A DNA stretch of 64,000 bases, taken from positions 289,766 through 353,765 of IMG/VR virus record IMGVR_UViG_3300028735_000003. The stretch is one strand, 5' to 3'. Below, one piece after another: positions 14,462 through 64,000 of this stretch (its first letter is position 1; each line of letters starts with the position of its first letter). The notes beneath the pieces were generated by a model, which did not search any database, had not been told where the DNA came from, and worked only from the letters and a program-made list of their open reading frames with translations. The position numbers and the translations under genes were made by a program.

Positions 14462-14486
14462 GATATACAATATAACATGTCTTTTG

Positions 14487-14558
14487 CATCCCTAGCAGGA
14501 CTCGAACCTGCATATATCAGTTTAGGAAACTGACGCCTCTCCTTTAGGCTATAGGGAC
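14487..14558 (-). tRNA. tRNA-Arg(CCT)
   Basis: Acceptor GTCCCTA/TAGGGAT, anticodon arm TCAGT-TTCCTAA-ACTGA, T arm GCAGG-TTCGAGT-CCTGC; CCA not fully encoded. Confidence 0.92.
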
Positions 14559-16771: not shown

Positions 16772-17133
16772 TGGTGGAGGATCGGGGGATCGAACCCCGG
16801 TCTTGAATACTTCGCGATTAAACTCATTCACAAACTTAGTTGATGTTTATCTGTCATCAGCACCAGTGAAAGAATTCGCTCTAACTGGCTAGTTACTGTT
16901 CATTTCGAATGTTAAATCCGTAACCGACAAAACATTCTATCCTTAGTGTGTTGAGCATTCATCAGATACCAAGAATATCTCTCCTAGAACACTCCAATTA
17001 AGCAGCTTGTGCCATTGGAACAAATGCATTGTCGTTTGCATTTATACGTTGATTGCTTTTTAACGAGTCCCTGCAATCATCCCCGGTTTGCATTTAAATC
17101 GCTATTTACCCAATCGAAACCAAATTATCCCCC
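16772..17133 (-). ncRNA. ssrA: tmRNA, tag peptide (A)ANDNAFVPMAQAA*
   Basis: 5' GGGGGAT pairs with 3' ATCCTCC-A-CCA including G3:U70; T arm CGGGG-TTCGATC-CCCCG; resume context ATAAAT-GCA; tag ORF 16998-17039. Confidence 0.96.
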
Positions 17134-36472: not shown

Positions 36473-37624
36473 TCACCACTCCAAAATATCCGAGTCATCA
36501 ATACCAGTAGAGATATATTTAACAGCACACCCTGAAAAATTGCTAATATAGTCAATAAATGGGGCTACTTCATCTTTATTTTTAGAATTTTTCCAACCTG
36601 GAAGACTAATTAACTGCACATTTGTGCCAAAAAAGTCGGATGGACATACCGGGATTTTATCATATGCTGCGCATATTTTTACTCTTTCCATGCCATCTAA
36701 TATGTCCAGCTTAGTAATTATTAAATTTTGAATGCCGCCTTTCTCACAAGCATATTTAGTGGCAGGTAAATCAAACCAACCAATTCTTCTTGGTCTACCT
36801 GTTGTCGCGCCATATTCATTACCAGCTTTTCTTAAAAACTCAGCCTCTTCACCGTGAATTTCGGTAGGAAATGGACCTTCTCCAACTTTGGTCAAATAAG
36901 CTTTGGCGACACCATAAACATTATCTAGTCTTATAAAATTAAATCCGCTAGTATATATGCCAGCAATCGTCGCATCACTGCAACTTACATAAGGATAAGT
37001 GCCGTGATTAATATCAATCATAACACCCTGAGACCCCTCAAATAATAAATCAGTTTTCATAAATTCGCGTTTCAATTCAAGAATATGTTTGAATTGAACA
37101 CCAGCCTCTTGTAGAGAGGAAGTTATTTCGCTGTTTGCTTTCAGCAAGTCCTTAATTCTTGTGCCTTTACGAGCGATTTTGCTCTTATAGGCAGGACCAA
37201 TGCCTTTATTAGTAGAACCGATGTATCCATTTGTCGCCGCATCTTCTTTTTTATGTTCTGGAAGAACAACGAATGCATCTGGGTCAACATAGATTCTTTT
37301 GGCAATATCTCCGAACTTATATTGACATGTAGACGCACTATCCTCTTCAACTTTCATGATTTCTGTATAAAGTTGATCCAAATCAATAACCATGCCTTGA
37401 GCGAGAAAGCATTTAGTATCTGGTAGTCTCCAGTCGAAAGATGGCAGAAGATTATGCACATACTTTAACTTTTGTCCATTGGAGAATGAACGGTAAATAG
37501 TGTGACCTGCGTTGGCTCCACCATTAAATCTAATTACCCATTCAAAATGTTTTGAAAAATAATGAGTAATACGCCCCTTGCCCTCATCTCCCCATGAGCT
37601 TCCGATAATTGCTATATTTGCCAT
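36473..37624 (-). CDS. purA: adenylosuccinate synthetase
   Basis: WGDEGKG, GGANAGHT, EGSQG, GATTGRPRRIGW, TKLD. Confidence 0.96.
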   Translation of the reverse strand: MANIAIIGSSWGDEGKGRITHYFSKHFEWVIRFNGGANAGHTIYRSFSNGQKLKYVHNLLPSFDWRLPDTKCFLAQGMVIDLDQLYTEIMKVEEDSASTCQYKFGDIAKRIYVDPDAFVVLPEHKKEDAATNGYIGSTNKGIGPAYKSKIARKGTRIKDLLKANSEITSSLQEAGVQFKHILELKREFMKTDLLFEGSQGVMIDINHGTYPYVSCSDATIAGIYTSGFNFIRLDNVYGVAKAYLTKVGEGPFPTEIHGEEAEFLRKAGNEYGATTGRPRRIGWFDLPATKYACEKGGIQNLIITKLDILDGMERVKICAAYDKIPVCPSDFFGTNVQLISLPGWKNSKNKDEVAPFIDYISNFSGCAVKYISTGIDDSDILEW

Positions 37625-45447: not shown

Positions 45448-45524
45448 TGGCATCCCCAGAAGGATTCGAACCCTCAACCTAGCGGGTAGAAGCCGCTTGC
45501 TCTATCCAATTGAGCTATAGGGAC
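45448..45524 (-). tRNA. tRNA-Arg(TCT)
   Basis: GTCCCTA acceptor, D arm GCTC/GAGC, anticodon arm AGCGG-CTTCTAC-CCGCT, TTCGAAT loop, encoded CCA. Confidence 0.95.
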
Positions 45525-47134: not shown

Positions 47135-47869
47135 TCACATAGATAATACAAATATTTCTTGAGATGTATTATTATTCTCTGCAACAGATCGTCTAATATA
47201 TTCGTTGTTGTCTTTAGCTAATAAAGCCAATGTTTCCGTTGATGTATTATTGTTCTCTGCGACAATTTGTCTAATATATTCACTTTTATCTTTAGCTTTA
47301 GCTAATAAAGCTAATATTTCTATAGGTGTATTCTTGTTTTCTGCAATACTTTTCCTAACAGACGACTACTTATCTTTAGCCAATAAAGCTAATGTTTCTG
47401 GAGATGTATTATTGTTTGCTGCAACATTTTGTCTAACAACTACATCATCATCTTTAGCTAATAAAGCCAACGTTACTGGAGATGTATTATTGTTTGCCGC
47501 GACATTTTGTCTAACACGTGCATCATTATCTTTAGCTAATAAAGCTAATGTAGCTGGAGACGTATTGTTATTTTCTGCAACGTAATACTTCGAATCAAGA
47601 TTCCAATAGTCCGATAGAGGATGATACAGAAGCGCTTTAGCAGTAGAGCCATCAGCAAGATTAACAGTTATAGTAGAACGACTATAACCAGCAGGTTCAA
47701 TTGTATTTCCCCATGCATTTCTGACAATGTTGCGAATCTCACGATGTCTTGCAAACGGCATTGTTTCTTTTACCTTATTGCTAACGTCCAGCGCGGTAAA
47801 CGCAAAATTATTGCGAATAAAATCACTAATAACAGTATCAACCATACTAATCAAATTAGAATCATTCAT
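47135..47869 (-). pseudogene. chimeric ORF: orphan N-terminus fused to about 5.5 LRV repeats, internal TAG at 47366
   Basis: Junction ...LDSKY|YVAENNNTS; frame continues 77 codons after the TAG to TGA at 47135. Confidence 0.8.
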
Positions 47870-50543: not shown

Positions 50544-50987
50544 GAAAACCTCGCAAGGAGACCCACGGCTTTAGCCGTGGGAGGAATTGCGGATTATAAA
50601 AGCTAATCAGCTTATTATTTTTATTTGATTTTCTACTGCTAATGATATACATATCTGTGATGCGAAGAACTTATAATTTTTATTTATCCGCTCCTGATGG
50701 GTTTTTAGACTTCCTAAAAACCTGCGCAGATATTTATTCGCATCATGTCGAGTGGGCTTTCGAAAATAAATCGACCAATAAAGTTAATAGAAATAAGTCG
50801 AGATATATTTGTAACAAATGTGGTTACATAGGACATGCAGATATTAATGCTGCTAAAAATATTAAGATAAATTACTTTCTCTCGTTAGCTGAAAAGAATA
50901 ACGAGCAGGCTGTTGTCAATCAGCCAAACGCAGCCAAAACTAATGTTTTGAGCAGCAAGCCCACGACTTTAGTCGTGGGTTATTGAC
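50544..50987 (+). mobile_element. tnpB: non-autonomous IS200/IS605 element, copy 2 (114-aa in-frame mini-TnpB at 50642-50986)
   Basis: Same TTCAT flank, end hairpins and TTGAC end as copy 1, with a larger internal deletion. Confidence 0.9.
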
Positions 50988-51486: not shown

Positions 51487-51558
<72 letters not shown>

Positions 51559-51796: not shown

Positions 51797-54121
51797 TTAT
51801 GTATTATCATCTCTTCCACTTAAAATTATCTTTTTAATTTCTGGATCTACAGAATAATTATTCAATAAAATTTTATCAATTTCATCATTATTTAGGTCAA
51901 GTAATCTAAGTTGAACTTTATAAGAAATATTAAAGTGTTTAGCTAATAATTTAAGATCATCAATCGGTGGATTACTATCAATAAACTCTAATCGTTGTTC
52001 TTCTGTGCCAAAATCGACCACGTAATATTTGTCATATTCTATTTCCTTTTTAGGAAATTCTCTAGGCGGTAATATTGGCTTACGTCTATCCGCCTCATAT
52101 TCATCAATCAAAGCTAATATTTCTGGAGTAACATTATTGTTTTTTTTGACATTTTGCCTAACATCTTTATCACTATCTTTAGCTAATAAAGCTAATATTT
52201 CAGTAGATGTATTATTGTTTGCCGCAACATTTTGTCTAACATATACATTATTATCTTTAGCCAATAAGGCTAATGTTCCTGAATATGTATTATTATTTGC
52301 TGCAACATTTTGTCTAACACCATGATAATTATCTTTAGCTAAGAAAGCTAATATTTCTGTAGGTGTATTATTGTTCTCTGCAACATTTTGTCTAACAAAT
52401 ACATCATTATCTTTAGCTAAGAACGCTAATATTTCTGTAGGTGTATTATTGTTTACTGCAACAGCCTGTCTAACATATTCATTGTTGTCTTTAGCTAATA
52501 AAGCTAATATTTCTGGTGATGTATGCTTGTTTGATGCAACATATTGTCTAAGATATTTATCATTATCTTTAGTAGCCAATAAAGCTAGTATTTCTTGAGG
52601 TGTATTATTGTTTTTTGCAACGCTTCTTCTAACATCGAAATCATCATCTTTAGCTAATAAAGATAATGTTTCTGGAGACGTATTATTATTTCTTGCAACA
52701 TTTATCCTAACAAATTTATAATAATCTTTAGCTAATAAAGCTAATATTTCTGTTGATGTATGCTTGTTTGATGCAACAAATTCTCTAACATTTGTGTTAT
52801 TATCTTTAGATAATAAAGTCAAAGTTTCTGGAGATGTATTATTGTTTTCTGCAACATTTCTCCTAACATATTCATCATTATCTTTAGCTAAGAAAGCCAA
52901 TGTTTCTGTAGGTGTATTCTTGTTGTCTGCGACACTCATTCTAACAAATGCATGGTAATCTTTAGCTAATAAAACTAGTGTTTCTGGGAGTGTATTGCTG
53001 TTTTTTGCAACTAGTTGTCTAACATCTCCGTCATTATCTTTAGCTAATAAAGCTAATGCTTCTGGAGGTGTATTATTATTTGCTGCAACATATTGTCTAA
53101 TATATACATCATTATCTTTAGATAATCTAGCTAATATCCTAGGATCAGTTTCTTCTTCTATTAATACACGCCTAAATTCATCATTCAAATATTTATAAGC
53201 TTGAATCTTTTGGTTATACTGTATATCATGTTCCATCATATATGAAACAATATCAACCTGGTTTTTAATCTTTTGATATTTTTCAGGAAAATGATATATA
53301 TTAAAATTAGGATTAACAGAAATAGCAACAGCCATAAAATGATTAAATTCTTCTAAAGATAATAATCCTTCCATGGCGTAAACAATAGCACCGGCAGGAA
53401 AAGCTTCAGCATCTTTAATAATTATCTCCTTTACTAAATTATAACCAGGGATATTTTCTGGGTCATAAATTTTATCAATAGCATCAAACGCTTCTATTTT
53501 TAATACATTATTGTCTACATCTCTTTGAGCTGCAAAAGCCACTTTATACAACGTATTGTGTGAAGGTAATGTCTTATCTATAAAATAATATATTACAACA
53601 TTATGATTTATATAGTTTTCATAATGAGGAACTTCTTGAGATGTTACACACCATCTTGTACCAGATCCGAAAGAACATGCTGCTAAATGAGTGTCAGGTC
53701 TAATTAACACATATCTTTCATTCTCAAATAATTTTTTGGCTGATTCATCCTTTACTTCAACAGTTCTTCTAACTTTATTCTCTAGGTCTTTAAGAACTTT
53801 ATTTAACTCTTCTAACGAGTTAAACTTTGAAATATCTCTATATTCTTCAGCAAGAGCTGGTAATTTTCTATCAAATAAATTAATAGAGTTTACTAATTCT
53901 TCTTGTGATTCTCCTTTGACTAGTTGACTAACTATCCAATCAAGATATTTCTGTTTAACTTTTTTGTTATTGGTTAAATCATCTATCTGAGAAGACAAAT
54001 GAGGATATCTATTTTTTAGATCCTTTACTGCTGCGGTCAGTATTATACTGTATAATCCCATCCTTGAGATCTTATAAAAATTATCGATTGATGATATTAA
54101 TTGACTATACTTGTACATCAC
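51797..54121 (-). CDS. LRV/HEAT-like repeat protein paralogue 1 (13 repeats)
   Basis: Conserved N-terminal domain (FGSGTRWCVTS), 26-aa repeats, conserved C-terminal cap. Confidence 0.93.
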   Translation of the reverse strand: MMYKYSQLISSIDNFYKISRMGLYSIILTAAVKDLKNRYPHLSSQIDDLTNNKKVKQKYLDWIVSQLVKGESQEELVNSINLFDRKLPALAEEYRDISKFNSLEELNKVLKDLENKVRRTVEVKDESAKKLFENERYVLIRPDTHLAACSFGSGTRWCVTSQEVPHYENYINHNVVIYYFIDKTLPSHNTLYKVAFAAQRDVDNNVLKIEAFDAIDKIYDPENIPGYNLVKEIIIKDAEAFPAGAIVYAMEGLLSLEEFNHFMAVAISVNPNFNIYHFPEKYQKIKNQVDIVSYMMEHDIQYNQKIQAYKYLNDEFRRVLIEEETDPRILARLSKDNDVYIRQYVAANNNTPPEALALLAKDNDGDVRQLVAKNSNTLPETLVLLAKDYHAFVRMSVADNKNTPTETLAFLAKDNDEYVRRNVAENNNTSPETLTLLSKDNNTNVREFVASNKHTSTEILALLAKDYYKFVRINVARNNNTSPETLSLLAKDDDFDVRRSVAKNNNTPQEILALLATKDNDKYLRQYVASNKHTSPEILALLAKDNNEYVRQAVAVNNNTPTEILAFLAKDNDVFVRQNVAENNNTPTEILAFLAKDNYHGVRQNVAANNNTYSGTLALLAKDNNVYVRQNVAANNNTSTEILALLAKDSDKDVRQNVKKNNNVTPEILALIDEYEADRRKPILPPREFPKKEIEYDKYYVVDFGTEEQRLEFIDSNPPIDDLKLLAKHFNISYKVQLRLLDLNNDEIDKILLNNYSVDPEIKKIILSGRDDNT

Positions 54122-54129
54122 AAATATAC

Positions 54130-54147
54130 TTACATATTAATATGTAA
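54130..54147. promoter_or_regulatory. 18-bp palindrome upstream of paralogue 1
   Basis: TTACATATTAATATGTAA. Confidence 0.7.
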
Positions 54148-54190
54148 AAATTAAAAAAAATTTTTATAAATATGTTATCACAAACTATAC

Positions 54191-56731
54191 CTAATAGTCT
54201 TTTCCACCCAGAATTATCTTTTTAATTTCCGGATCTACCGTATAGTTATTCAACAATATCTCATCAATTTCATCATTATTTAAATAAAGCAATCTGAGTT
54301 GAACTTTATAAGAGATATTAAAGTGTTTAGCCAATAATTTAAGATCATTAATTGGAGGATTACTATCAATAAATTTTAATCGTTGTTCTTCTGTACCAAA
54401 ATTGATTATATAGTTGTTGTCATATTCTATTTCTTTTTTAGGAAACTCTCTAGGATGTAATATTCGCTTGGGTTTAGCGGATTCATATTCATCTATTAAA
54501 GCTAATATTTCTGGAGTAACATTATTGTTTTTTGCAACGAGTTGTCTAACATCTTTATCACTATCTTTAGCTAATAAAGCTAACGTTGCTGTAGATGTAT
54601 TATTATTTGCTGCGACTAGTCTTCTGACTGACACCTCATTATCTTTGGCTAATAAATCCAATGTTTCTGGAGATGTATTATTATTTCTTGCAACATTTTG
54701 TCTAACATGTACATCATTATCTTTAGCTAATAAAGCTAATGTGGCTGGAGATGTATTATTATGTTCTGCAACATGTTGTCTAATAGATGTATATTTATCT
54801 TTAGCTAATAAAGCTAATATTTCTGGAGACATATTACTGTTTAATGCAAGATGTGTTTTAACATATATACTGTTACTTTTAGCCAATAAAAATAATATTT
54901 TTGTAGGTGTATTATTATTTGCTGCAACATATATTCTAACATCCTCATCATAATCTTTATATAATAAAGATAATGTTTCTTTAGATGTATTATTATTTTT
55001 TGCAACATGTTGCCTAACAGACACATCTCTATCTTTAGCTAGCAAAGCTAATGTTTCTGGAGATGTATTATTATTTCCTGCAACATTTGTCCTAACAATC
55101 GCATCATTATCTTTGGCTAATAAAACTAACGTTTCTTGAGATGTATTATTATTTTTTGCAACATTTCTCTTAACAAAGACACCATTGTTTTTAGCTAATA
55201 AATCCAATGTTTCTTTGGATGTATTATTGTTTGCTGCAACAGATTGTCTAACATATGTATTATTATCTTTAGCTAATAGATCTAATATTTCTGGAGATGT
55301 ATTATTATGTTCTGCAACAGATTGCCTAATAATCTCATAATTATCTTTAGCTAATAAAGCAAATATCTCTGAATGAGTGTTATGGTTTTTTGCAACATAT
55401 TCTCTAACAGATACATCATTATCTCTAGCTAACAAAGCTAATGTTTCTGCAGAAGTATTATTATTTGCCGCAACATTTTGTCTAACATTTAAATCATTAT
55501 CTTTAGCTAATAAAGCTAATGTAGCTGGAGACGTATTGTTATTTTCTGCAACGTATTCTCTAACAGATACATCATTATCTCTAGCTAACAAAGCTAATGT
55601 TTCTGCAGAAGTATTATTATTTGCCGCAACAGATTGTCTAATATATTTACCATTATCTCTAGCTAACAAAGCTAATGTTTCTGCAGATGTATTCTTGTTT
55701 TCTGCAACAGCTTGTCTAACATATTTATCATTGTCTTTAGCTAATTTAGCTAATACCCTTGGATCAGTTTCCTTTTCTGTTAGTACTAGTTTAAATTCAT
55801 CATTTAAATATTTATAAACTTGAAGTTTTTGATTATATTGTATGTTATGTTTCATAACATATGAAAAAATATCCGTCTGTTTTTTAATCTGTTGATATTT
55901 TTCAGGGAAAGAAGACAAATCAAAATAAGCGCCAACATCAATAGCAACAGACATAAAATGATTAAATTCTTCTAAAGATAATAATCCTTCCATGGCGTAA
56001 ACAATAGCACCAGCGGGAAAAGCTTCAGCATCTTTAATAATTATCTGCTTTACCAAATTATAACCAGCAATATCTTCTGGTTCATAAATTTTATCAGTCG
56101 CATCAAATGCTTCTATTTTTAATACGTTATTGTCTAGATCTCTTTGAACAGCAAAAGCTACTTTATACAATATATTTTGTGAAGGCAAGGTCTTATCTAT
56201 AAGATAATATATTACAACATTATGATTTATATAGTTTTCATAGTGAGGAACTTCTTGAGATGTTACACACCATTTTGTACCAGATCCAAAAGAACATGCT
56301 GCTAACTTAGTATCTGGTCTAATTAACACATATCTTCCATTTTCAAATAATTTCTTGGCTGATTCATCTTTTACTTCAACAGTTCTTCTAACCTTATTTT
56401 CTAGGTCATTAAGAACTTTCTTTAAATCTGCTAACGAATTAACCCTTGAAATATCTCTATTTTCTACAGAAAGAGCTGGTAATTTTCTATCAAACAACTC
56501 AATATAACGTAATAATTCTTCTTGAGATTCTCCTTTGTCTAATTGATAAACTATCCAATCAAGATATTTCGATTTAACTTTACCATTTAAATAATCTATT
56601 TTAGAAGACAGATGAGGATATCTATCTTTTAAATGCTTTACTGATGCGGTCAGTATTATACTGTATAACCCCATCCTTGAGATCTTATAAAAATTATCAA
56701 TTGATGATATTAGTTGACTATACTTGTACAT
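54191..56731 (-). CDS. LRV/HEAT-like repeat protein paralogue 2 (16 repeats)
   Basis: Same architecture as paralogue 1. Confidence 0.93.
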   Translation of the reverse strand: MYKYSQLISSIDNFYKISRMGLYSIILTASVKHLKDRYPHLSSKIDYLNGKVKSKYLDWIVYQLDKGESQEELLRYIELFDRKLPALSVENRDISRVNSLADLKKVLNDLENKVRRTVEVKDESAKKLFENGRYVLIRPDTKLAACSFGSGTKWCVTSQEVPHYENYINHNVVIYYLIDKTLPSQNILYKVAFAVQRDLDNNVLKIEAFDATDKIYEPEDIAGYNLVKQIIIKDAEAFPAGAIVYAMEGLLSLEEFNHFMSVAIDVGAYFDLSSFPEKYQQIKKQTDIFSYVMKHNIQYNQKLQVYKYLNDEFKLVLTEKETDPRVLAKLAKDNDKYVRQAVAENKNTSAETLALLARDNGKYIRQSVAANNNTSAETLALLARDNDVSVREYVAENNNTSPATLALLAKDNDLNVRQNVAANNNTSAETLALLARDNDVSVREYVAKNHNTHSEIFALLAKDNYEIIRQSVAEHNNTSPEILDLLAKDNNTYVRQSVAANNNTSKETLDLLAKNNGVFVKRNVAKNNNTSQETLVLLAKDNDAIVRTNVAGNNNTSPETLALLAKDRDVSVRQHVAKNNNTSKETLSLLYKDYDEDVRIYVAANNNTPTKILFLLAKSNSIYVKTHLALNSNMSPEILALLAKDKYTSIRQHVAEHNNTSPATLALLAKDNDVHVRQNVARNNNTSPETLDLLAKDNEVSVRRLVAANNNTSTATLALLAKDSDKDVRQLVAKNNNVTPEILALIDEYESAKPKRILHPREFPKKEIEYDNNYIINFGTEEQRLKFIDSNPPINDLKLLAKHFNISYKVQLRLLYLNNDEIDEILLNNYTVDPEIKKIILGGKDY

Positions 56732-56742
56732 TACAAATATAT

Positions 56743-56760
56743 TTACATATTAATACACAA
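56743..56760. promoter_or_regulatory. degenerate 18-bp palindrome upstream of paralogue 2
   Basis: TTACATATTAATACACAA. Confidence 0.6.
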
Positions 56761-56792
56761 AAATAAAAAAATTATAGGTATGTTATTACGGA

Positions 56793-59186
56793 TTAGGTCT
56801 TGTAATCTCTTCCACTTAAAATTATTTTTTTAATTTCCGGATCTACCGTATAGTTATTCAACAATATCTCATTAATTTCATCATTATTTAAATCAAGCAA
56901 TCTGAGTTGAACCTTATAAGAGATATTAAAGTGTTTAGCTAATAATTTAAGATCATTAATCGGTGGATTACTATCAATAAATTTCAGTCGTTGTTCTTCT
57001 GTACCGACGTTGATTATATAGTTGTTGTCAAATTCTATTTCTTTTTTAGGAAACTCTCTAGTAGGTAATATTCTCTTACGTCTATCTGCTTCATATTCAT
57101 CTATTAAAGATAATATTTCTGGAGTAACGTTTTTGTTTTTTGTAACAGCTTGTCTAACGCCTTTATCGCTATCTTTAGCTAATAAAGCTAATGTTTCTTG
57201 TGGTGTATTATTGTTTTTTGCAACATTTTTTCTAACATATTTATCACTATCTTTAGCTAATAAAGCTAATATTTCTGTAGATGTATTATTATTCGATGCA
57301 ACATTTTCTCTAACAAACACATCATTATCTTTATACAATAAAGATAATGTTTCTGGAGATGTATTATTATTTTTTGCAACTAGTCTTCTAACAACTACGT
57401 CACTACCTTTAGTTAATAAAGACAATGTTTCTGGATGTGTATTATTGTTTTTTGCAACATTTTGTCTAACAACTTTATCATCGTCTTTAGCTAATAAAAA
57501 CAATGTTTCTGCTGAAGTATTATTGTTTTTTGCAACATGTTGTCTAACACCGTCATCATAATCTTTAGCTAATAAAGCTAATGTTTCTGGAGATGTATTA
57601 TTGTTTGATGCAACATTTTCTCTAACAAGAACATCATTATCTATAGCCAATAAAGCTAATATTTTCTGAGATGTATTATTATTTTCTGCAACACCTTGCC
57701 TAATATATCTACTATTATCTTTAGCTAATAACCCTAATATTTCTTGAGGTGTATTATTATTTAGTGCAACATGTTCTCTAACATATTCATTATCTTTAAC
57801 TAATAAATATAATATTTCTTTAGGTGTATTATTATTTCCTGCAACACGTTGTCTAACACGTTCATTGTGATCTTTGCTCAATAAAGCAAATATTTCTTTA
57901 GGTGTATTATTGTTTTTTGCAACATTTTCCCTAACAGTTATATCATTATCTTTAGCTAATAAAGCTAATACTTCTGGAGGTGTATTATTGTTTTTTGCAA
58001 CATTTTCCCTAACAGTTATATCATTATCTTTAGCTAATAAAGCTAATACTTCTGGAGGTGTATTATTATTTCCTGCAACATTCTCTCTTACAAGTGCATA
58101 ATTATCTTTAGCTAATAAAGCTAATACTTCTGGAGGTGTATTATTATTTCCTGCAACATATTGTTTAATATATGCATCATTAGCCAATATACTCAATATC
58201 CTTGGATTAGTTTCTTCTTTTACTAATGCGCGCATAAATTCATAATCTAAATATTTATAAGCCTGAAGTTTTTGATTATATTGTATATCATGTTCCATGA
58301 TATAAGAAACAATATCAACCTGTTTTTTAACCTGTTGATATTTTTCTGGGAACTCATCCAAATTAAAAGGATGGCCAACAGAAATAGCAACAGACATAAA
58401 ATGATTAAATTCTTCTATAGACAATAATCCCTCTTTTGCGTATACAACGGCACCAGTAGGAAAAGCTTCAGCATCTTTGATAATTATTTCTTTTACTAAA
58501 TTATAACCAGGCATATCTTCTGGTTTATAAATTTTATCAGCCGCGTCAAACGCCTCTATTTTTAATACCTTATTATCTAGATCTCTTTTAGCCGCAAAAG
58601 CCACTTTATACAATATATTTTGTGAAGGTAAGGTCTTATCTATAAGATAATAAATTACAGTGTTGTGATTTATATAGTTTTCATAATGAGGAACTTCTTG
58701 AGAAGTTATGCACCATCTTGTACCAGATCCAAAAGAACATGCTGCCAAATGAGTATCTGGTCTAATTAATACATATCTTTCATTTTCAAATAATTTCTTG
58801 GCTGATTCATCTTTTACTTCAACAGTTCTTCTAACTTTATTCTCTAGGTCTTTAAGAACTTTATTTAACTCTTCTAATGACTTAAACTTCGAAATATCCC
58901 TATATTCTGCAGCAAGAGCTTGTGATTTTCTATCAAATAAATTAATAGAGTTTACTAATTCTTCTTGTGATTCTCCTTTGAGAAGTTGACTAACTATCCA
59001 ATCAAGATATTTCGGTTTAACTCCTTTGTTGATTAAATAATCTATCTGAGAAGATAGCTCAGGATATTTTTCTTTTAGAGCCTTTACTGATACGGTTGAT
59101 GCGGTCAGTATTATACTGTATAATCTCATACTTGAGATTTTATAAAAATTATCAATTGATGATATTAATTGACTATACTTGTACAT
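56793..59186 (-). CDS. LRV/HEAT-like repeat protein paralogue 3 (14 repeats)
   Basis: Same architecture; includes a near-exact 78-bp tandem duplication starting at 57901. Confidence 0.93.
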   Translation of the reverse strand: MYKYSQLISSIDNFYKISSMRLYSIILTASTVSVKALKEKYPELSSQIDYLINKGVKPKYLDWIVSQLLKGESQEELVNSINLFDRKSQALAAEYRDISKFKSLEELNKVLKDLENKVRRTVEVKDESAKKLFENERYVLIRPDTHLAACSFGSGTRWCITSQEVPHYENYINHNTVIYYLIDKTLPSQNILYKVAFAAKRDLDNKVLKIEAFDAADKIYKPEDMPGYNLVKEIIIKDAEAFPTGAVVYAKEGLLSIEEFNHFMSVAISVGHPFNLDEFPEKYQQVKKQVDIVSYIMEHDIQYNQKLQAYKYLDYEFMRALVKEETNPRILSILANDAYIKQYVAGNNNTPPEVLALLAKDNYALVRENVAGNNNTPPEVLALLAKDNDITVRENVAKNNNTPPEVLALLAKDNDITVRENVAKNNNTPKEIFALLSKDHNERVRQRVAGNNNTPKEILYLLVKDNEYVREHVALNNNTPQEILGLLAKDNSRYIRQGVAENNNTSQKILALLAIDNDVLVRENVASNNNTSPETLALLAKDYDDGVRQHVAKNNNTSAETLFLLAKDDDKVVRQNVAKNNNTHPETLSLLTKGSDVVVRRLVAKNNNTSPETLSLLYKDNDVFVRENVASNNNTSTEILALLAKDSDKYVRKNVAKNNNTPQETLALLAKDSDKGVRQAVTKNKNVTPEILSLIDEYEADRRKRILPTREFPKKEIEFDNNYIINVGTEEQRLKFIDSNPPINDLKLLAKHFNISYKVQLRLLDLNNDEINEILLNNYTVDPEIKKIILSGRDYKT

Positions 59187-59197
59187 TACAAATATAC

Positions 59198-59215
59198 TTA
59201 CATATTAATATGTAA
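59198..59215. promoter_or_regulatory. 18-bp palindrome upstream of paralogue 3
   Basis: TTACATATTAATATGTAA. Confidence 0.7.
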
Positions 59216-59249
59216 AAATTAAAAAATTTTATAAATATGTTATCACAAA

Positions 59250-61913
59250 CTATACCTCATAGTCTTTTCCACCCATAATTATCTTTTTAATTTCTGGATC
59301 TACAGAATAATTATTCAACAATATCTTATCAATTTCATCATTATTTAAATCAAGCAATCTGAGTTGAACTTTATAAGAAATATTGAAGTGTTTAGCTAAT
59401 GATTTAAGATCATTAATCGGTGGATTACTATCAATAAATTTTAAGCGTTGTTCTTCTGTACCGACATTGATTATATAGTTGTTGTCAAATTCTTTTTTAG
59501 GAAACTCTCTAGTAGGTAATATCCGCTTAGGTTTAGCTTCTTCATATTTATCTTCATCTTCATATTCATCTTTAATAGACACATCATTATCTCTATCTAA
59601 TAAATCTAATATTTCTGGTGGTGTATTTTTGTTATCTTTAACAATTTTTCTAACAATAGCATCATTGTCTTTAGCTAATAAAGCTAATGTCTCTGGAAAT
59701 GTATTATTATTTGCTGCAACATATCGTCTAACATATACATCATTATCTTTAGCTAATAAAGCTAGTGCTTCTGGAGGTGTATTGTTGTTTTTTGCAATAT
59801 TCTGCCTAACAACTTCATAATTATCTTTAGATAATAAAGCTAATATTTCTGGTGATGTATTCTTGTGTGATGCAACGCTTGCTCTAATATAGACATCATT
59901 GTCTTTAGCTAATAAAGCTAGTATTTCTGAAGATGTATTTTTGTTTGATGCAACATTATGTCTAACATAATAATCCTTATCTTTAGACAATAAAGCTAGT
60001 GCTTCTGGAGGTGTATTGTTGTTTTTTGAAACATTTTTCCTAACATAATAATCATTATCTCTAGCTAACAAAGCTAATATTTCTTGCGGTGTATTATTGT
60101 TTTCTGCAACAGTTTGTCTAATATAGGCACTATCACCTTTAGCTAATCTAGCCAATATTTCTGGAGGTGCCTTATTATTTTTTGCAACACTTTGTATGAC
60201 ACCTCCATAACTATCTTTAGCCAATAAAGCTAATATTTCGGGAGATGTATTATTATTTTCTGCAACATATTGTCTAACAAACATGCTATTATCTTTAGCT
60301 AATAAAGCCAATGTCTCTGTGGATGTATTATTGTTTGATGCAACACGTTGTCTAACAACAACATCATTATCTTTAGCTAATGAAGCTAATATTTCTGGCG
60401 GTGTATTTTTGTTTTCTACAACATTTAGTCTGATATCCCTATCATAATCTTTAGATAATAAAACTAATATTTCTGAAGGTGTTCTAACGTTTATTGCAAC
60501 AGCCATTCTAATATTGTAATTATCATCTTTAGATAATAATGCTAATGTCTCCTGAGACGTATTATTATTTTTTGCAACACATTCTCTAACATATACACTA
60601 TTATCTTTAGCTAATAAAGCTAATGTTGCTGGAGATGTATTCTTGTGTAATGCAACAAGTTGTCTAACATGTTCATCATCGTCTTTAGCTAGTAAACCCA
60701 ATGTTTCTGGAGATGTGTTCTTGTTTGATGCAACATGTTCTCTAACAGATACATCATTATCTTTGCCCAATAAATCTAATATTTCTGGTGGTGTATTGTT
60801 GTTTCCCGCAACATGTTTTCTTACATACACGTTATTATCTTTAGCTAATAAAACTAATGCTTCTGGAGGTGTATTATTATTATCTGCAACAGCTTGTCTA
60901 ATATATTCATTATCACCTTTAGCTAATTTAGCTAATATCCTTGGATCAGTTTCCTTTTCTGTTAGTACTAGCTTAAATTCATCATTTAAATATTTATAAG
61001 CCTGAATTTTTTGATTATACTGTATATCATGTTCCATTATATAAGAAACAATATCAACCTGTTTTTTAATATTGTGATATTTTTTAGGAAAATAAGACAA
61101 GTCAAAATGAGGGTTAACAGAAATAGCAACAGCCATAAAATGATTAAATTCTTCTGGAGACAATAATCCCTCCATTGCGTAAACAACAGCTCCTGCAGGA
61201 AAAGCTTCAGCGTCTTTAATAATTATTTCTTTTACTAAATTATAACCAGATATATCTTCTGGCTTATAAATTTTGTCAGTAGCATCAAACGCCTGTATTT
61301 TTAATACTTTATTGTCTAAATCTCTTTGAACTGCAAAAGCCACTTTATACAAGGTGTTGTGTGAAGGTAAAGTCTTATCTATAAGATAATAAATTACAGT
61401 GTTGTGATTTATATAGTTTTCATAATAAGGAACATCTTGAGATGTTACACACCATTTTGTGCCAGATCCAAAAGAACATGCCGCTAAATGAGTATCTGGT
61501 CTAATTAATACATATCTTTCATTCTCAAATAATTTTTTAGCTGATTCATCTTTTACTTCAACAGTTCTTCTAACCTTATTCTCTAGGTCTTTAAGAACTT
61601 TATTTAACTCTTCTAACGAGTTAAACTTCGAAATATCTCTATGTTCTTCAGCAAGAGCTGGTAATTTTCTATCAAACAACTCAATAGAACGTAATAATTC
61701 CTCTTGTGATTCTCCTTTGTCTAATTGATAAACTATCCAATCAAGATATTTCGATTTAACTTTATTTTTTAATTCATCTATTTTAGAAGACAAACGAGGA
61801 TATCTGATTTTTAGATCCTTTACTGACGCGGTCAGTATTATGCTGTATAACCCCATCCTCGAGATCTTATAAAAATTATCAATTGATGATATTAATTGAC
61901 TATACTTGTACAT
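59250..61913 (-). CDS. LRV/HEAT-like repeat protein paralogue 4 (17 repeats plus a partial one)
   Basis: Same architecture. Confidence 0.93.
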   Translation of the reverse strand: MYKYSQLISSIDNFYKISRMGLYSIILTASVKDLKIRYPRLSSKIDELKNKVKSKYLDWIVYQLDKGESQEELLRSIELFDRKLPALAEEHRDISKFNSLEELNKVLKDLENKVRRTVEVKDESAKKLFENERYVLIRPDTHLAACSFGSGTKWCVTSQDVPYYENYINHNTVIYYLIDKTLPSHNTLYKVAFAVQRDLDNKVLKIQAFDATDKIYKPEDISGYNLVKEIIIKDAEAFPAGAVVYAMEGLLSPEEFNHFMAVAISVNPHFDLSYFPKKYHNIKKQVDIVSYIMEHDIQYNQKIQAYKYLNDEFKLVLTEKETDPRILAKLAKGDNEYIRQAVADNNNTPPEALVLLAKDNNVYVRKHVAGNNNTPPEILDLLGKDNDVSVREHVASNKNTSPETLGLLAKDDDEHVRQLVALHKNTSPATLALLAKDNSVYVRECVAKNNNTSQETLALLSKDDNYNIRMAVAINVRTPSEILVLLSKDYDRDIRLNVVENKNTPPEILASLAKDNDVVVRQRVASNNNTSTETLALLAKDNSMFVRQYVAENNNTSPEILALLAKDSYGGVIQSVAKNNKAPPEILARLAKGDSAYIRQTVAENNNTPQEILALLARDNDYYVRKNVSKNNNTPPEALALLSKDKDYYVRHNVASNKNTSSEILALLAKDNDVYIRASVASHKNTSPEILALLSKDNYEVVRQNIAKNNNTPPEALALLAKDNDVYVRRYVAANNNTFPETLALLAKDNDAIVRKIVKDNKNTPPEILDLLDRDNDVSIKDEYEDEDKYEEAKPKRILPTREFPKKEFDNNYIINVGTEEQRLKFIDSNPPINDLKSLAKHFNISYKVQLRLLDLNNDEIDKILLNNYSVDPEIKKIIMGGKDYEV

Positions 61914-61924
61914 TACAATTATAC

Positions 61925-61942
61925 TTACATATTAATATGTAA
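61925..61942. promoter_or_regulatory. 18-bp palindrome upstream of paralogue 4
   Basis: TTACATATTAATATGTAA. Confidence 0.7.
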
Positions 61943-61976
61943 AAATTAAAAAAATTTATAAGTATATCATTACGAA

Positions 61977-64000
61977 TTATATCTCACCATCTCTTCCGCC
62001 TAAAATTATCTTTTTAATTTCTGGATCTACTGCATAATTTTCCAACAATATTTCATTAATTTCATCATTATTTAAATCAAGCAATCTGAGTTGAACTTTA
62101 TAGGAGATATTAAAGTGTTTAGCTAATAATTTAAGATCATTGATCGGCGGATTACTATCAATAAACTTTAGTCGTTCTTCTTCTGTACCAAAATTTATTA
62201 TATATTTGTTTTTATTTTCTATTTCTTTTTTAGGAAATTCTCTAGGAGGTAATATTCGCTTAGGTTTAGCTACTTCATATTCATCTATTAAAGCTAGTAT
62301 TTCTGGAGTAACATTTTTGTTTTTGGCAACGAATTGTCTAACATCTTTATCACTATCTTTAGCCAATAAAGCTAATGTTTCTTGTGATGTATTATTGTTT
62401 TTTGCAACATTTTTTCTAACATCTTTATCACTATCTTTAGCTAATAAAACTAATGTTTCTGTAGATGTATTATTATTCGATGCAACATTTTCTCTAACAC
62501 CCAAATCATTATCTTTAGATAATAAAGCTAATATTTGATGAGTTGTCTTATTATTTAATGCAACATTTCGTCTAACAATTACATAATTATCTTTAGCTAA
62601 TAAAGACAATGTTTCTTGTGGTGTATTATTGTTTTTAGCAACATTTTCTCTGACATATTCACTACTATCATTAGATAATAAAACCAATATTTCTTCAGAT
62701 GTATTATTGTTTCTAGCAACAAATTGCCTAACATTATCATAATCGTCTTTAGCTAATAAAGATAATGTTTGTGTAGATATATTCTTGTTTAATGCAACTA
62801 ATTGTCTAACATATGAATCACGATCTTTAGCTAATAAAGCTAACGTTACTGGAGATGTATTATTGTTTAGTGCAACATGTTGTCTAACATATGAATCACT
62901 ATCTTTATCTAATAAAGCTAACGTTACTGAAGATGTATTATTGTTTCCTGCAACATTTTGTCTAACATATACATTATTATCTTTAGCTAATAAAGCTAAT
63001 GTTTCTGAAGATGTATTATTGTTTCCTGCAATAGTTTTTCTAATATGTAAATCATTATCTTTAGCTAATAAAGCTAATATTTCTTGAGATGTATTATTGT
63101 TTCCTGCAATAGCTCGTCTAATATATAAATCATTATCTTTAGCTAATAAAGCTAATATTTCTTGAGGTGTATTATTGTTTCCTGCAATAGCTCGTCTAAT
63201 ATAGTTATCATTATCTTTAGCTAATAAAGCTAATATTTCTTGAGGTGTATTATTGTTTCCTGCAATAGCTCGTCTAATATAGTTATCATTATCTTTAGCT
63301 AATATATCCAATATCCTAGGATCAGTTTCTTTTTCTATTAATGCGCGCCTAAATTCATTATTTAAATATTTATAAGCTTGAAGTTTTTGATCATATTGTA
63401 TATTATGCTTCATAATATATGAAACAATGCTAGCATGTCTTTTAATATAATGATATTTTTCAGGAAAACGATATATATTAAAATTAGGATCAATAGAAAT
63501 AGCAACAGCCATAAAATGATTAAATTCTTCTGTAGACAATAATCCTTCCATGGCGTAAACAATAGCACCTGCAGGAAAAGCTTCGGCATCCTTAATAATT
63601 ATTTCTTTCACTAAATTATAACCAGGTATATCCTCTGGTTTATAAATTTTATCAGTCGCATCAAACGCCTCTATTTCTAATACCTTATTGTCTAGATCTC
63701 TTTGAGCCGCAAAAGCCACTTTATATAATATATTGTGTGAAGGTAAAGTCTTATCTATAAAATAATAGATTACAACATTGTGATTTATATAGTTTTCATA
63801 GTGAGGAAATTCTTGAGATGTTATACACCATCTTGTACCAGATCCAAAAGAACATGCCGCTAAATGAGTATCTGGTCTAATTAATACATATCTTTCATTC
63901 TCAAATAATTTTTTAGCTGATTCATCTTTTACTTCAACAGTTCTTCTAACCTTATTCTCTAGGTCTTTAAGAACTTTATTTAACTCTTCTAACGAGTTAA
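61977..64000 (-). CDS. LRV/HEAT-like repeat protein paralogue 5 (13 repeats), 5' end beyond the window
   Basis: Frame stays open upstream of the called GTG at 63719 and matches the N-terminal domain of the paralogues up to the window edge. Confidence 0.9.
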   Translation of the reverse strand, partial: NSLEELNKVLKDLENKVRRTVEVKDESAKKLFENERYVLIRPDTHLAACSFGSGTRWCITSQEFPHYENYINHNVVIYYFIDKTLPSHNILYKVAFAAQRDLDNKVLEIEAFDATDKIYKPEDIPGYNLVKEIIIKDAEAFPAGAIVYAMEGLLSTEEFNHFMAVAISIDPNFNIYRFPEKYHYIKRHASIVSYIMKHNIQYDQKLQAYKYLNNEFRRALIEKETDPRILDILAKDNDNYIRRAIAGNNNTPQEILALLAKDNDNYIRRAIAGNNNTPQEILALLAKDNDLYIRRAIAGNNNTSQEILALLAKDNDLHIRKTIAGNNNTSSETLALLAKDNNVYVRQNVAGNNNTSSVTLALLDKDSDSYVRQHVALNNNTSPVTLALLAKDRDSYVRQLVALNKNISTQTLSLLAKDDYDNVRQFVARNNNTSEEILVLLSNDSSEYVRENVAKNNNTPQETLSLLAKDNYVIVRRNVALNNKTTHQILALLSKDNDLGVRENVASNNNTSTETLVLLAKDSDKDVRKNVAKNNNTSQETLALLAKDSDKDVRQFVAKNKNVTPEILALIDEYEVAKPKRILPPREFPKKEIENKNKYIINFGTEEERLKFIDSNPPINDLKLLAKHFNISYKVQLRLLDLNNDEINEILLENYAVDPEIKKIILGGRDGEI

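What the first reader, a model, noticed from the sequence alone, without database searches (positions are those of the whole stretch)
51797..64000. Tandem array of at least five paralogues carrying about 73 surface-variable 26-aa repeats: a candidate natural binder library
Seen: every gene has the same short leader, the same ~330-aa domain (AACSFGSGT[KR]WC[VI]TS), then 13, 16, 14, 17 and 13 copies of a 78-bp unit, then the same C-terminal cap. The unit framework (xExLxLLAKD-xxxx-VR-xx-VA-x-NxNT[SP]) is fixed. The four residues after KD, the two after VR and the one before N differ in nearly every copy (charged, aromatic or small). Established: this is the LRV/HEAT-like alpha-solenoid class, and such solenoids bind partners through variable residues on one helix face. 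Inference: the phage keeps a recombining repertoire of modular binders attached to a common domain, for example to neutralise diverse host defence proteins or to adapt to hosts. The W-C motif of the N-terminal domain recalls PcfJ-like domains of large phages, but that link is unverified.
Basis: partly seen in the sequence, partly recalled or inferred. Interest (0 to 1): 0.85.

Follow-up and report, generated by a model that had tools for sequence, protein, structure and literature searches.

The report
Tandem LRV-repeat protein family, huge phage
A 354-kb hot-spring phage carries at least eight head-to-tail copies of one gene: an uncharacterised phage domain fused to a helical-repeat rod whose exposed positions differ in almost every repeat, so it looks like a family of binding proteins, but no target or function has been shown.

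Summary
Five minus-strand paralogues (51797-64000) share a leader, a ~320-aa N-terminal domain with the motif AACSFGSGT[KR]WC[VI]TS, and 13, 16, 14, 17 and 13 units of 26 aa (73 in all). They also share a C-terminal cap. The units match Pfam LRV (E 1e-53 to 1e-77), fold as a confident alpha-solenoid, and resemble 1LRV, PP2A-A HEAT repeats and alphaRep binders.

The array is larger than reported. The window ends at the contig end. The contig start holds a frameshifted sixth copy, and a 4.6-kb contig from the same metagenome holds two more.

Variability is highest at unit positions 14, 15, 18, 19 and 22, one face of the second helix. That is the same spacing as the randomised positions of alphaRep libraries. 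Pooled dN/dS there is about 1.7-2.6, against about 0.2 for the framework, N-domain and cap.

The N-domain belongs to a large unnamed phage family (2,661 clusters). Its members are fused to LRV, HEAT and WG repeats, and viral structural matches named ankyrin or LRR proteins exist. One member, PA5oct gp205, is a virion protein. The PcfJ link is weak.

"Binder family" is plausible. "Recombining repertoire" and "anti-defence" are not shown. I rate it a new member of a known kind, of moderate interest.

The parts
51797..54118 (-). g1, paralogue of 773 aa (ATG at 54118; an in-frame GTG lies at 54121): N-domain, 13 LRV units (52130-53146), linker, C-cap
   Evidence: AF2 full-length model pLDDT 89
54191..56731 (-). 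g2, paralogue of 846 aa with 16 LRV units (54518-55765). It contains two perfect 78-bp direct repeats spaced 156 bp apart. A variant lacking 55476-55631 exists in an ENA assembly.
56793..59186 (-). g3, paralogue of 797 aa with 14 LRV units (57126-58208); units 3 and 4 are identical in nucleotide sequence
59250..61913 (-). g4, paralogue of 887 aa with 17 LRV units (59622-60947) plus a truncated 18th and an acidic stretch before the cap
61977..64000 (-). g5, paralogue cut at its N-terminus by the contig end; 13 LRV units (62310-63323)
54122..54190 (-). Conserved 61-69-bp intergenic spacer. Equivalent spacers lie at 56732-56792, 59187-59249 and 61914-61976. Each holds the palindrome ACATATTAATATGT and a TATAAT/TATATT-like hexamer just upstream of the ATG. 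The stretch from -36 to +84 is 93-95% identical among copies.
47135..47869 (-). Small related gene: an unrelated 95-aa N-terminus followed by five of the same 26-aa units. An in-frame TAG (47366-47368) falls in the variable 12-15 segment of the third unit. The gene is either a pseudogene or a 167-aa product.

Best explanation
This is a lineage-specific tandem expansion, with at least seven intact copies and one decaying copy, of a three-part phage protein.

1. A conserved N-terminal domain of about 260-320 aa. It has a helical N-terminal part and a five-stranded alpha/beta core, with an invariant Trp-Cys, a Lys and a Phe. It belongs to a large, unnamed family that is mostly from phages and is perhaps distantly PcfJ-like.
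2. An LRV/HEAT-like alpha-solenoid of 12-17 units of 26 residues.
3. A conserved small helical C-terminal domain on a flexible linker.

Shown here:
- the architecture and the copy number;
- purifying selection on the N-domain, the cap and the repeat framework;
- variability and an excess of non-synonymous change concentrated at positions 14, 15, 18, 19 and 22 of helix B.

Inferred:
- the solenoid is a protein-binding surface;
- each paralogue presents a different surface;
- the family therefore brings one common module (N-domain and/or cap, activity unknown) to different protein partners.

The arrays grow by ordinary unequal recombination or slippage between units, followed by point substitution at exposed positions. 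They do not use a dedicated diversification machine. Whether the partners are host proteins (takeover or counter-defence) or phage/virion components is open. One distant homologue is a virion protein.
For: - Architecture and copy number.
- LRV identity: Pfam 176-250 bits. AF2 pLDDT is 96-98 over the repeats. Foldseek finds 1lrv (TMt 0.66, 26% identity), PP2A PR65 (E 8e-10) and alphaRep binders 6fsq/6bzx.
- Variable columns: entropy is 2.9-3.4 bits at columns 14, 15, 19 and 22. These columns lie in helix B (positions 14-22) with i, i+1, i+4, i+5, i+8 spacing. The conserved V16, R17, V20 and A21 lie between them.
- The same spacing around 'VR' is used for the randomised, concave-face, target-contacting positions of alphaRep libraries, which were derived from natural HEAT-like repeats (PMC3754942).
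- Selection, pairwise: variable columns 2.6-3.0 against framework about 0.2. Tree-based count: pooled variable columns 1.74 (p = 3e-4), with columns 15, 6 and 22 individually above 1. Columns 5, 8, 11, 17 and 23 are strongly constrained.
- N-domain dN/dS is about 0.23 and cap about 0.15, at pS of about 0.30-0.36.
- Column 15 is aromatic in 37/73 units and the repeat domain is near neutral, which fits a protein interface.
- The family holds 2,661 clusters at 50% identity. Members carry LRV, HEAT or WG repeats, and viral structural matches named ankyrin-repeat or leucine-rich-repeat proteins also appear. There are two tandem copies in L012 and a two-N-domain fusion in L010.
- Growth by duplication: identical adjacent units in g3, 94-96% identical units in g5, and 78-bp perfect repeats in g2.
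- Ordinary substitution spectrum.
Against: - No partner, activity or expression data exist.
- The variable columns were chosen after seeing their entropy. The genome is 28-30% G+C, so synonymous sites are compositionally constrained. dN/dS above 1 may therefore overstate positive selection, and only three columns are individually significant.
- I had no model coordinates. 'One face' rests on secondary structure and periodicity, and concave versus convex is by analogy only.
- High variability at these same positions is a generic property of HEAT-like repeats, so it does not by itself prove a diversified repertoire.
- Interior units are no more alike within a gene than between genes (0.751 against 0.751) and show no collinearity. 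That is compatible with old, saturated divergence rather than active shuffling.
Confidence: 0.55

Rival explanations
1. Passive expansion. The genes encode a structural, scaffold or spacer protein, for example a virion-internal or decoration protein. Its length is set by the repeat number. The variable columns are simply solvent-exposed positions under relaxed constraint, and the paralogues are largely redundant.
For: The distant homologue PA5oct gp205 was found in virions by ESI-MS/MS. Most variable columns have dN/dS not significantly different from 1. The same columns are variable in HEAT-like repeats generally. One copy is decaying and a related small gene carries an in-frame stop, which suggests weak selection on individual copies.
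Against: Seven long ORFs (770-890 aa) remain intact at pS of about 0.3, with dN/dS of about 0.2 in the N-domain and cap. The pooled variable columns exceed neutrality. There is an aromatic bias at column 15. The array does not sit in a recognisable virion module: its neighbours are a Dam methylase, an NAD ligase, a DenV-like glycosylase and rIIA/B.
Confidence: 0.25
2. An actively diversified repertoire. A dedicated mechanism (DGR-like mutagenic retrohoming, or programmed cassette recombination as in VLR or antigenic-variation systems) rewrites the variable codons or reshuffles units between the paralogues within populations.
For: A two-unit length variant of g2, otherwise 100% identical over 5.4 kb, exists in a second assembly. 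PcfJ-like domains occur upstream of DGR variable regions in some CPR bacteria (PMC5758913). The in-frame TAG of the small gene falls in the variable 12-15 segment of a unit.
Against: Differences between close units show no adenine bias: 104/154 involve an A, against about 0.70 expected from composition. Transitions are 59%. No reverse transcriptase was seen among the ORFs scanned, though the scan was not exhaustive. The first and last units are positionally conserved but interior units show no shared blocks between genes. The length variant is explained by ordinary recombination between 78-bp perfect repeats, or by an assembler difference on what may be the same reads.
Confidence: 0.07
3. A nucleic-acid reader or DNA mimic. 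The solenoid would recognise DNA or RNA one unit per base (as PUF, PPR and TALE proteins do), or mimic DNA to block restriction enzymes.
For: The units are modular, each with a few specificity-like positions. HEAT-like repeats can bind DNA (AlkD-type; from general knowledge, not tested here).
Against: The net charge of the repeat domain is only -14 to +1, so it is neither basic nor strongly acidic. Five to seven positions vary per unit rather than a 2-3-residue code. The top structural matches are protein-binding HEAT scaffolds.
Confidence: 0.05

Closest known systems
LRV protein of Azotobacter vinelandii (PDB 1LRV; Pfam PF01816 LRV / PF25591 LRV_2)
   Same: The repeat family is the same: Pfam scores are far above threshold. 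The fold match is TMt 0.66 with 26% identity over 231 columns. Both have short two-helix units that build a solenoid.
   Different: The unit here is 26 residues with a conserved N-x-N-T loop. There are 12-17 units instead of 8. No Fe-S domain is present. The solenoid is fused to a phage-specific N-domain and a C-cap, and there are eight tandem paralogues. The function of 1LRV is itself unknown (general knowledge).
alphaRep artificial binders, built from natural thermostable HEAT-like repeats
   Same: Both are helical-hairpin solenoids. The hypervariable positions have identical spacing around the conserved 'VR': alphaRep 18, 19, 22, 23, 26 against 14, 15, 18, 19, 22 here. alphaRep structures are among the fold matches (6fsq, 6bzx).
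   Different: alphaRep is a designed 31-residue unit whose binding has been demonstrated. Here binding is only inferred, and the diversity is natural and spread over paralogues within one genome.
Multigene families of repeat proteins in large viruses (poxvirus ankyrin/PRANC host-range genes; ankyrin, LRR and FNIP expansions in giant viruses)
   Same: Both are tandem paralogue expansions of a variable repeat module joined to a constant domain. Viral structural matches to the N-domain include a Marseillevirus 'ankyrin repeat protein' and phage 'leucine-rich repeat' proteins.
   Different: The repeat class, constant domain and host domain differ. The analogy rests on general knowledge and no functional link was tested.
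Pseudomonas jumbo phage PA5oct gp205 (EST35_0205, QCG76086.1)
   Same: It is a homologue of the N-domain: 91 bits against the family profile and Foldseek E 5e-8. It is encoded by a jumbo phage.
   Different: It shares only about 27% identity over about 150 aa. It is 482 aa, single copy, and not known to carry LRV units. It is annotated as virion-associated by ESI-MS/MS, which is unknown for the proteins here.
PcfJ of Enterococcus plasmid pCF10 (Pfam PF14284)
   Same: The motifs align in register: G-x-G-T-K-W-C-I-T with E-G-x-x-L-x-H-C-V-G, each followed by a hydrophobic strand. Eight of 88 family members give weak Pfam PcfJ hits. Phage proteins named 'PcfJ like' are weak fold matches.
   Different: The window proteins give no Pfam hit even at E<=10. 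hhalign probability is at most 1%. His-Cys is replaced by Trp-Cys. The function of PcfJ is unknown.

Membership tests
Pfam LRV (PF01816) / LRV_2 (PF25591) | Sequence score above the curated gathering threshold | tested here: met
   176-250 bits against a cut-off of 21.6; LRV_2 71-80 bits against 27
Pfam LRV (PF01816) / LRV_2 (PF25591) | Short (about 24-26 aa) two-helix units stacked into a solenoid like 1LRV | tested here: met
   AF2 pLDDT 96-98. Each unit is a 7-residue helix, a 5-residue loop, a 9-residue helix and a 4-residue loop. Foldseek 1lrv TMt 0.66.
HEAT-like repeats of the alphaRep/PBS-HEAT type | Hypervariable positions i, i+1, i+4, i+5, i+8 flanking a conserved V-R on the second helix | tested here: met
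   Entropy maxima at columns 14, 15, 18, 19 and 22 around V16-R17. The alphaRep positions are 18, 19, 22, 23 and 26 (PMC3754942).
HEAT-like repeats of the alphaRep/PBS-HEAT type | Variable positions form the concave, ligand-contacting surface | not testable with these tools
Only DSSP and periodicity were used.
PcfJ-like (Pfam PF14284) | Sequence score above the gathering threshold (25 bits) | tested here: not met
   No hit for the window N-domain at E<=10. Eight of 88 relatives hit weakly, best E 1.5e-4.
PcfJ-like (Pfam PF14284) | Significant profile-profile or fold similarity to bona fide PcfJ | tested here: inconclusive
   hhalign gives E 0.047 (probability 1%) and E 0.41 (probability 0.14%), but with the motifs in register. 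Foldseek to BFVD proteins named 'PcfJ like' gives E 1.5e-3 to 0.4. An ESM Atlas cluster has 33% PcfJ members, at rank 67.
Unnamed phage N-domain family (includes PA5oct gp205) | Significant sequence similarity and the conserved F...Y-G-x-G-T-x-W-C-I...K...D core | tested here: met
   2,661 clusters at E<=1e-3 and 621 at E<=1e-10. Invariant F80, W154, C155 and K190. gp205 scores 91 bits.
Diversity-generating retroelement target | Adenine-specific differences between repeat copies (TR/VR) | tested here: not met
   104/154 differences involve A, against about 0.70 expected from base composition; transitions 59%
Diversity-generating retroelement target | A nearby reverse transcriptase and template repeat | not tested
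   None was seen among about 40 ORFs scanned. The window and the rest of the 354-kb genome were not scanned exhaustively.

The most novel reading that the evidence does not exclude
The array is a natural counterpart of a designed repeat-protein library. Eight or more paralogous alpha-solenoids would have helix-B faces under diversifying selection, and each would recognise a different host protein, for example a defence or surface component. Each would deliver the same uncharacterised Trp-Cys domain (or the C-terminal cap) to its target. That would make it a host-range or counter-defence multigene family in a bacteriophage, analogous to the poxvirus ankyrin/PRANC families. It would also give a first functional handle on a phage domain family of more than 2,600 clusters.
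Probability: 0.25. Interest if true: 0.75.

Novelty: new member of a known kind. Interest (0 to 1): 0.5.

Why it matters
If the paralogues bind different partners, this would be a clear case of a phage keeping a multigene family of modular binders. It would also give an entry point to the function of a very large unnamed phage domain family that is repeatedly fused to different repeat scaffolds. In addition, the units are a natural 26-residue solenoid from a hot-spring phage, with a defined framework and defined variable positions, which could interest protein engineers. As it stands, it is a well-documented but functionally uncharacterised expansion of a known repeat class.

Tried and rejected
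- Near-identical phage genomes in INPHARED: none, only a tRNA hit.
- Close relatives in IMG/VR and JGI metagenomes: only the same contig and one sister contig, so there is no orthologous array to compare.
- Second word-index search with g4: no new variants. Cluster look-up: singletons.
- N-domain against PDB by sequence profile: only coiled-coil noise. By fold: best E 0.6.
- N-domain against Pfam: nothing at E<=10. PHROGs: a weak hit to phrog_17056, of unknown function.
- PcfJ link by hhalign against pCF10 PcfJ and against a 7-sequence PcfJ alignment: not significant. The PcfJ homologues retrieved were too similar to one another to make a deep profile.
- C-terminal cap: Pfam gives only PB1 at E 0.014. 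ESM Atlas scores were below 0.8.
- Sigma-70 promoter scan: uninformative in this AT-rich repeat DNA.
- DGR-type adenine mutagenesis: rejected.
- Nucleic-acid binding or DNA mimicry: disfavoured by charge.
- Literature: no paper combining 'leucine rich repeat variant' with phage. The jumbo-phage comparative survey does not mention this family.
- Antisense ORFs inside the arrays (for example 54414-54953, plus strand) were treated as artefacts of the repeat.


Full report
**1. Observation**

The region 51797-64000 holds five consecutive minus-strand ORFs of 773/774, 846, 797, 887 and more than 673 codons.

- Their translations share the leader MYKYSQLISSIDNFYKIS and a ~320-aa N-terminal region with AACSFGSGT[KR]WC[VI]TS.
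- Each has a long run of 26-aa units and a common C-terminal ~100 aa.
- Tandem Repeats Finder reports 78-bp arrays (also read as 156- and 234-bp periods) with scores of about 1000-1250 in every gene.
- An HMM built from 12 units recovers 13, 16, 14, 17 (plus a truncated 18th) and 13 units, 73 in all.
- Pfam LRV (PF01816) scores 176-250 bits against a threshold of 21.6, and LRV_2 also passes.

**2. The array is larger than the window**

The window is the last 64 kb of a 353,765-bp contig, JGI 3300028735 Ga0272446_1000003, also IMG/VR UViG_3300028735_000003. g5 is cut by the contig end.

- The other end of the same contig (L006) carries a sixth copy. Its N-domain has at least three frameshifts and a premature stop, and it has only seven units, so it is a pseudogene. 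It is followed by the conserved spacer and the first 18 codons of yet another copy, which run off the contig.
- A 4,584-bp contig of the same metagenome (L008) carries two further paralogues. One starts at exactly the residue where g5 starts (NSLEEL...). The other has 793 aa, 12 units and a K/H/D/E-rich insert. L008 ends with the same 18-codon leader.
- The assembler evidently broke at two segments that are nearly identical in all copies. The stretch from -36 to +84 and the core at +324 to +480 are 91-97% identical.
- The simplest reading is a circular or circularly permuted map with at least eight copies, seven intact and one decaying, and about 105 units.
- About 4 kb downstream, a small gene (47135-47869) joins an unrelated 95-aa N-terminus to five of the same units. 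It has an in-frame TAG in the variable 12-15 segment of the third unit.

**3. Context**

- The window encodes rIIA (phrog_612, E 1e-94), T4-type RNA ligase and polynucleotide kinase, a Thg1-like enzyme, topoisomerase I and an FtsK-like ATPase. It also encodes a ClpP-like protease, a PurZ/adenylosuccinate-synthetase-like protein and two intein-containing genes.
- It carries a tmRNA and two tRNA-Arg genes.
- Just upstream of the array lie a Dam methylase and an NAD-dependent ligase. Just downstream lie a TnpB fragment, a DenV-like glycosylase and a weak macro domain.
- This is a huge phage.
- The metagenome is from hot spring LCB-006 (PMC9246946).
- No close relative exists in INPHARED, IMG/VR or the JGI metagenomes.

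**4. The repeat domain**

AlphaFold2 on full-length g1, with a 61-sequence alignment, gives mean pLDDT 89, and 96-98 across the repeats.

Each unit has this layout:

| Unit positions | Element |
|---|---|
| 2-8 | helix A |
| 9-13 (A-K-D-N-D) | loop |
| 14-22 | helix B |
| 23-26 (N-N-N-T) | loop |

- Foldseek finds PP2A PR65 HEAT scaffolds (E about 1e-9), alphaRep artificial binders (6fsq, 6bzx), 1LRV (TMt 0.66, 26% identity) and importins.
- After the last unit come a long capping helix, a disordered linker of about 25 residues (pLDDT below 50), and a confident five-helix C-terminal domain.

**5. Where the variation lies**

Column entropy peaks as follows:

| Column | Entropy (bits) |
|---|---|
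| 14 | 3.4 |
| 15 | 3.0 |
| 19 | 2.9 |
| 22 | 2.9 |
| 18 | 2.3 |
| 2 | 2.3 |

- Columns 12, 13, 1 and 6 are intermediate.
- L5, L8, K10, D11, R17, V20, A21, N23 and N25 are nearly fixed.
- Columns 14, 15, 18, 19 and 22 are i, i+1, i+4, i+5, i+8 on helix B, with V16, R17, V20 and A21 between them. That pattern is one exposed helical face. This is an inference, because I had no coordinates.
- The same spacing around the conserved 'VR' defines the randomised positions (18, 19, 22, 23, 26) of alphaRep libraries. Those positions were taken from natural HEAT-like repeat variability. They line the concave face and make the contacts in the solved complexes (PMC3754942).
- The pattern is therefore the generic one for this repeat class. 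That supports a binding surface, and it also shows the pattern is not peculiar to this phage.

**6. Selection**

| Measure | Result |
|---|---|
| Pairwise Nei-Gojobori, six most variable columns | dN/dS 2.6-3.0 in every identity bin |
| Pairwise Nei-Gojobori, framework columns | dN/dS about 0.2 |
| Parsimony count on a unit tree, pooled variable columns | 1.74 (p = 3e-4) |
| Parsimony count, column 15 | 4.8 (p = 0.007) |
| Parsimony count, column 6 | 3.4 (p = 0.008) |
| Parsimony count, column 22 | 2.2 (p = 0.03) |
| Columns 5, 8, 11, 17, 23 | strongly constrained |
| N-domain between paralogues | about 0.23, at pS about 0.30-0.36 |
| C-terminal cap between paralogues | about 0.15, at pS about 0.30-0.36 |

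Three caveats apply:

- the columns were chosen post hoc;
- the AT-rich genome limits synonymous change;
- gene conversion may be acting.

The variable positions are clearly not under purifying selection, and positive selection is suggested but not proven.

Column 15 is aromatic in 37/73 units. The repeat domain is near neutral, with net charge -14 to +1. This fits a protein interface better than nucleic-acid binding or DNA mimicry.

**7. How the arrays change**

- Only the first and the last two units are positionally conserved between paralogues.
- Interior units show no collinearity. They are as similar between genes as within genes, 0.751 in both cases.
- Recent events are visible. Two adjacent units in g3 are identical, three units in g5 are 94-96% identical, and g2 holds two perfect 78-bp repeats 156 bp apart.
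- An ENA assembly contig (L001, 5,435 bp) is 100% identical to the window, except that exactly this 156-bp two-unit segment (55476-55631) is missing.
- This could be a real recombination variant in the population. It could also be an assembler difference, possibly on the same reads. I cannot tell which.
- Differences between close units show no adenine bias and an ordinary transition-rich spectrum, so a DGR-type mechanism is unlikely.

**8. The N-terminal domain**

- It has no Pfam hit at E<=10 and only a weak hit to a PHROG of unknown function.
- A full HMMER scan of 1.84 billion representatives finds 2,661 clusters at E<=1e-3 and 621 at E<=1e-10. These cover residues of about 25-260, in proteins of 220-2,300 aa, some with two to five copies of the domain.
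- Some members carry LRV, HEAT or WG repeats.
- Invariant residues are F80, W154, C155 and K190.
- The AF2 model (pLDDT 86) has a helical N-terminal part and a five-stranded alpha/beta core.
- It has no PDB fold match, best E 0.6, and no PDB sequence match.
- It matches 23 viral models at E<=1e-3. These include a PA5oct 'structural protein', a Marseillevirus 'ankyrin repeat protein', phage 'leucine-rich repeat' proteins, and several paralogues from single phages.
- PA5oct gp205 scores 91 bits against the family profile and is annotated as detected in virions by ESI-MS/MS (PMC7318152).
- Two tandem paralogues occur in a 172-kb contig (L012), and a fusion with two N-domains plus LRV arrays occurs in an 86-kb contig (L010).

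**9. The PcfJ link**

- Eight of 88 family members give sub-threshold Pfam PcfJ hits, best E 1.5e-4.
- An ESM Atlas cluster with 33% PcfJ members appears at rank 67.
- BFVD proteins named 'PcfJ like' match at E 1.5e-3 to 0.4.
- hhalign against pCF10 PcfJ puts G-T-K-W-C-I-T over L-x-H-C-V-G in register, but with probability of at most 1%.
- A distant relationship is plausible but not established, and the window proteins are not members of PF14284.
- PcfJ-like domains have been noted upstream of DGR variable regions in CPR bacteria (PMC5758913). That is a precedent for joining this kind of domain to a variable binding module.

**10. Verdict**

The best-supported reading is a lineage-specific expansion of a modular phage protein. 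It has a constant N-domain and cap, with an LRV solenoid whose exposed helix-B face differs between units and paralogues. The arrays grow by ordinary duplication or unequal recombination, followed by substitution.

That it is a 'binder family' is a reasonable inference from the repeat class. 'Recombining repertoire' and 'neutralising host defence' are not shown.

The repeat class, its variability pattern and repeat-protein multigene families in large viruses are all known. What is new is this particular combination, and the size of the unnamed N-domain family. I score interest 0.5.

Noticed in passing
window 64000 (= contig end); L006:10001-11953; L008:1-4584: Both ends of the 353,765-bp contig lie inside the paralogue array. 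A separate 4.6-kb contig starts and ends at exactly the same residues (NSLEEL... and ...FYKIS). The assembly therefore broke on near-identical segments, and the genome map is probably circular or permuted.
   Followed up: partly
L006:10001-11836: The sixth paralogue has at least three frameshifts and an early stop in its N-domain, and only seven units. It is a decaying copy at the upstream edge of the array.
   Followed up: yes
window 47135-47869 (-): A small gene with an unrelated 95-aa N-terminus carries five of the same 26-aa units. An in-frame TAG at 47366-47368 falls in the variable 12-15 segment of the third unit. This is evidence that the repeat module has moved to another gene.
   Followed up: partly
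window 54122-54190, 56732-56792, 59187-59249, 61914-61976: Every intergenic spacer holds the perfect 14-bp palindrome ACATATTAATATGT, followed by a TATAAT/TATATT-like hexamer about 5 bp before the ATG. No obvious Shine-Dalgarno sequence is present. It may be a shared operator or promoter.
   Followed up: no
window 16772-17132 (-): A phage-encoded tmRNA (Rfam RF00023, 117 bits; tag peptide ANDNAFVPMAQAA by ARAGORN), plus tRNA-Arg(CCU) at 14486-14558 and tRNA-Arg(UCU) at 45448-45524.
   Followed up: partly
window 36476-37624 (-): An adenylosuccinate-synthetase/PurZ-like gene (phrog_1211, E 1e-78). It raises the possibility of 2-aminoadenine (Z) DNA in this phage.
   Followed up: no
window 29757-31895 (-) and 33078-35045 (-): LAGLIDADG intein-like insertions in an AAA/terminase-like ATPase and in an RlaP-type nucleotidyltransferase.
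   Followed up: no
window 50642-50986 (+): A 114-aa ORF with only the C-terminal TNB domain of TnpB/Cas12f (Pfam E 2e-7). It is a transposon remnant next to the array.
   Followed up: no
window 51487-51557: A perfect (AAT)x23.7 microsatellite about 240 bp downstream of g1.
   Followed up: no
L008:4048-4167: Paralogue g8 has a low-complexity insert rich in K/H/D/E/Y (an 18-bp period) between the solenoid and the C-cap. g4 has a shorter acidic stretch at the same place, so linker length varies.
   Followed up: no
window 54414-54953 (+), 57022-57561 (+) and similar: Long antisense ORFs inside the arrays (LANKANVSGDVLLF... repeats) are by-products of the repeat on the opposite strand, not genes.
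   Followed up: partly
L012:7659-12304: Two tandem paralogues (771 and 767 aa) of the same N-domain family, with C-terminal regions that have no Pfam hit, in a 172-kb contig (GCA_049318585.1). Tandem duplication of this family is therefore not unique to this phage.
   Followed up: partly
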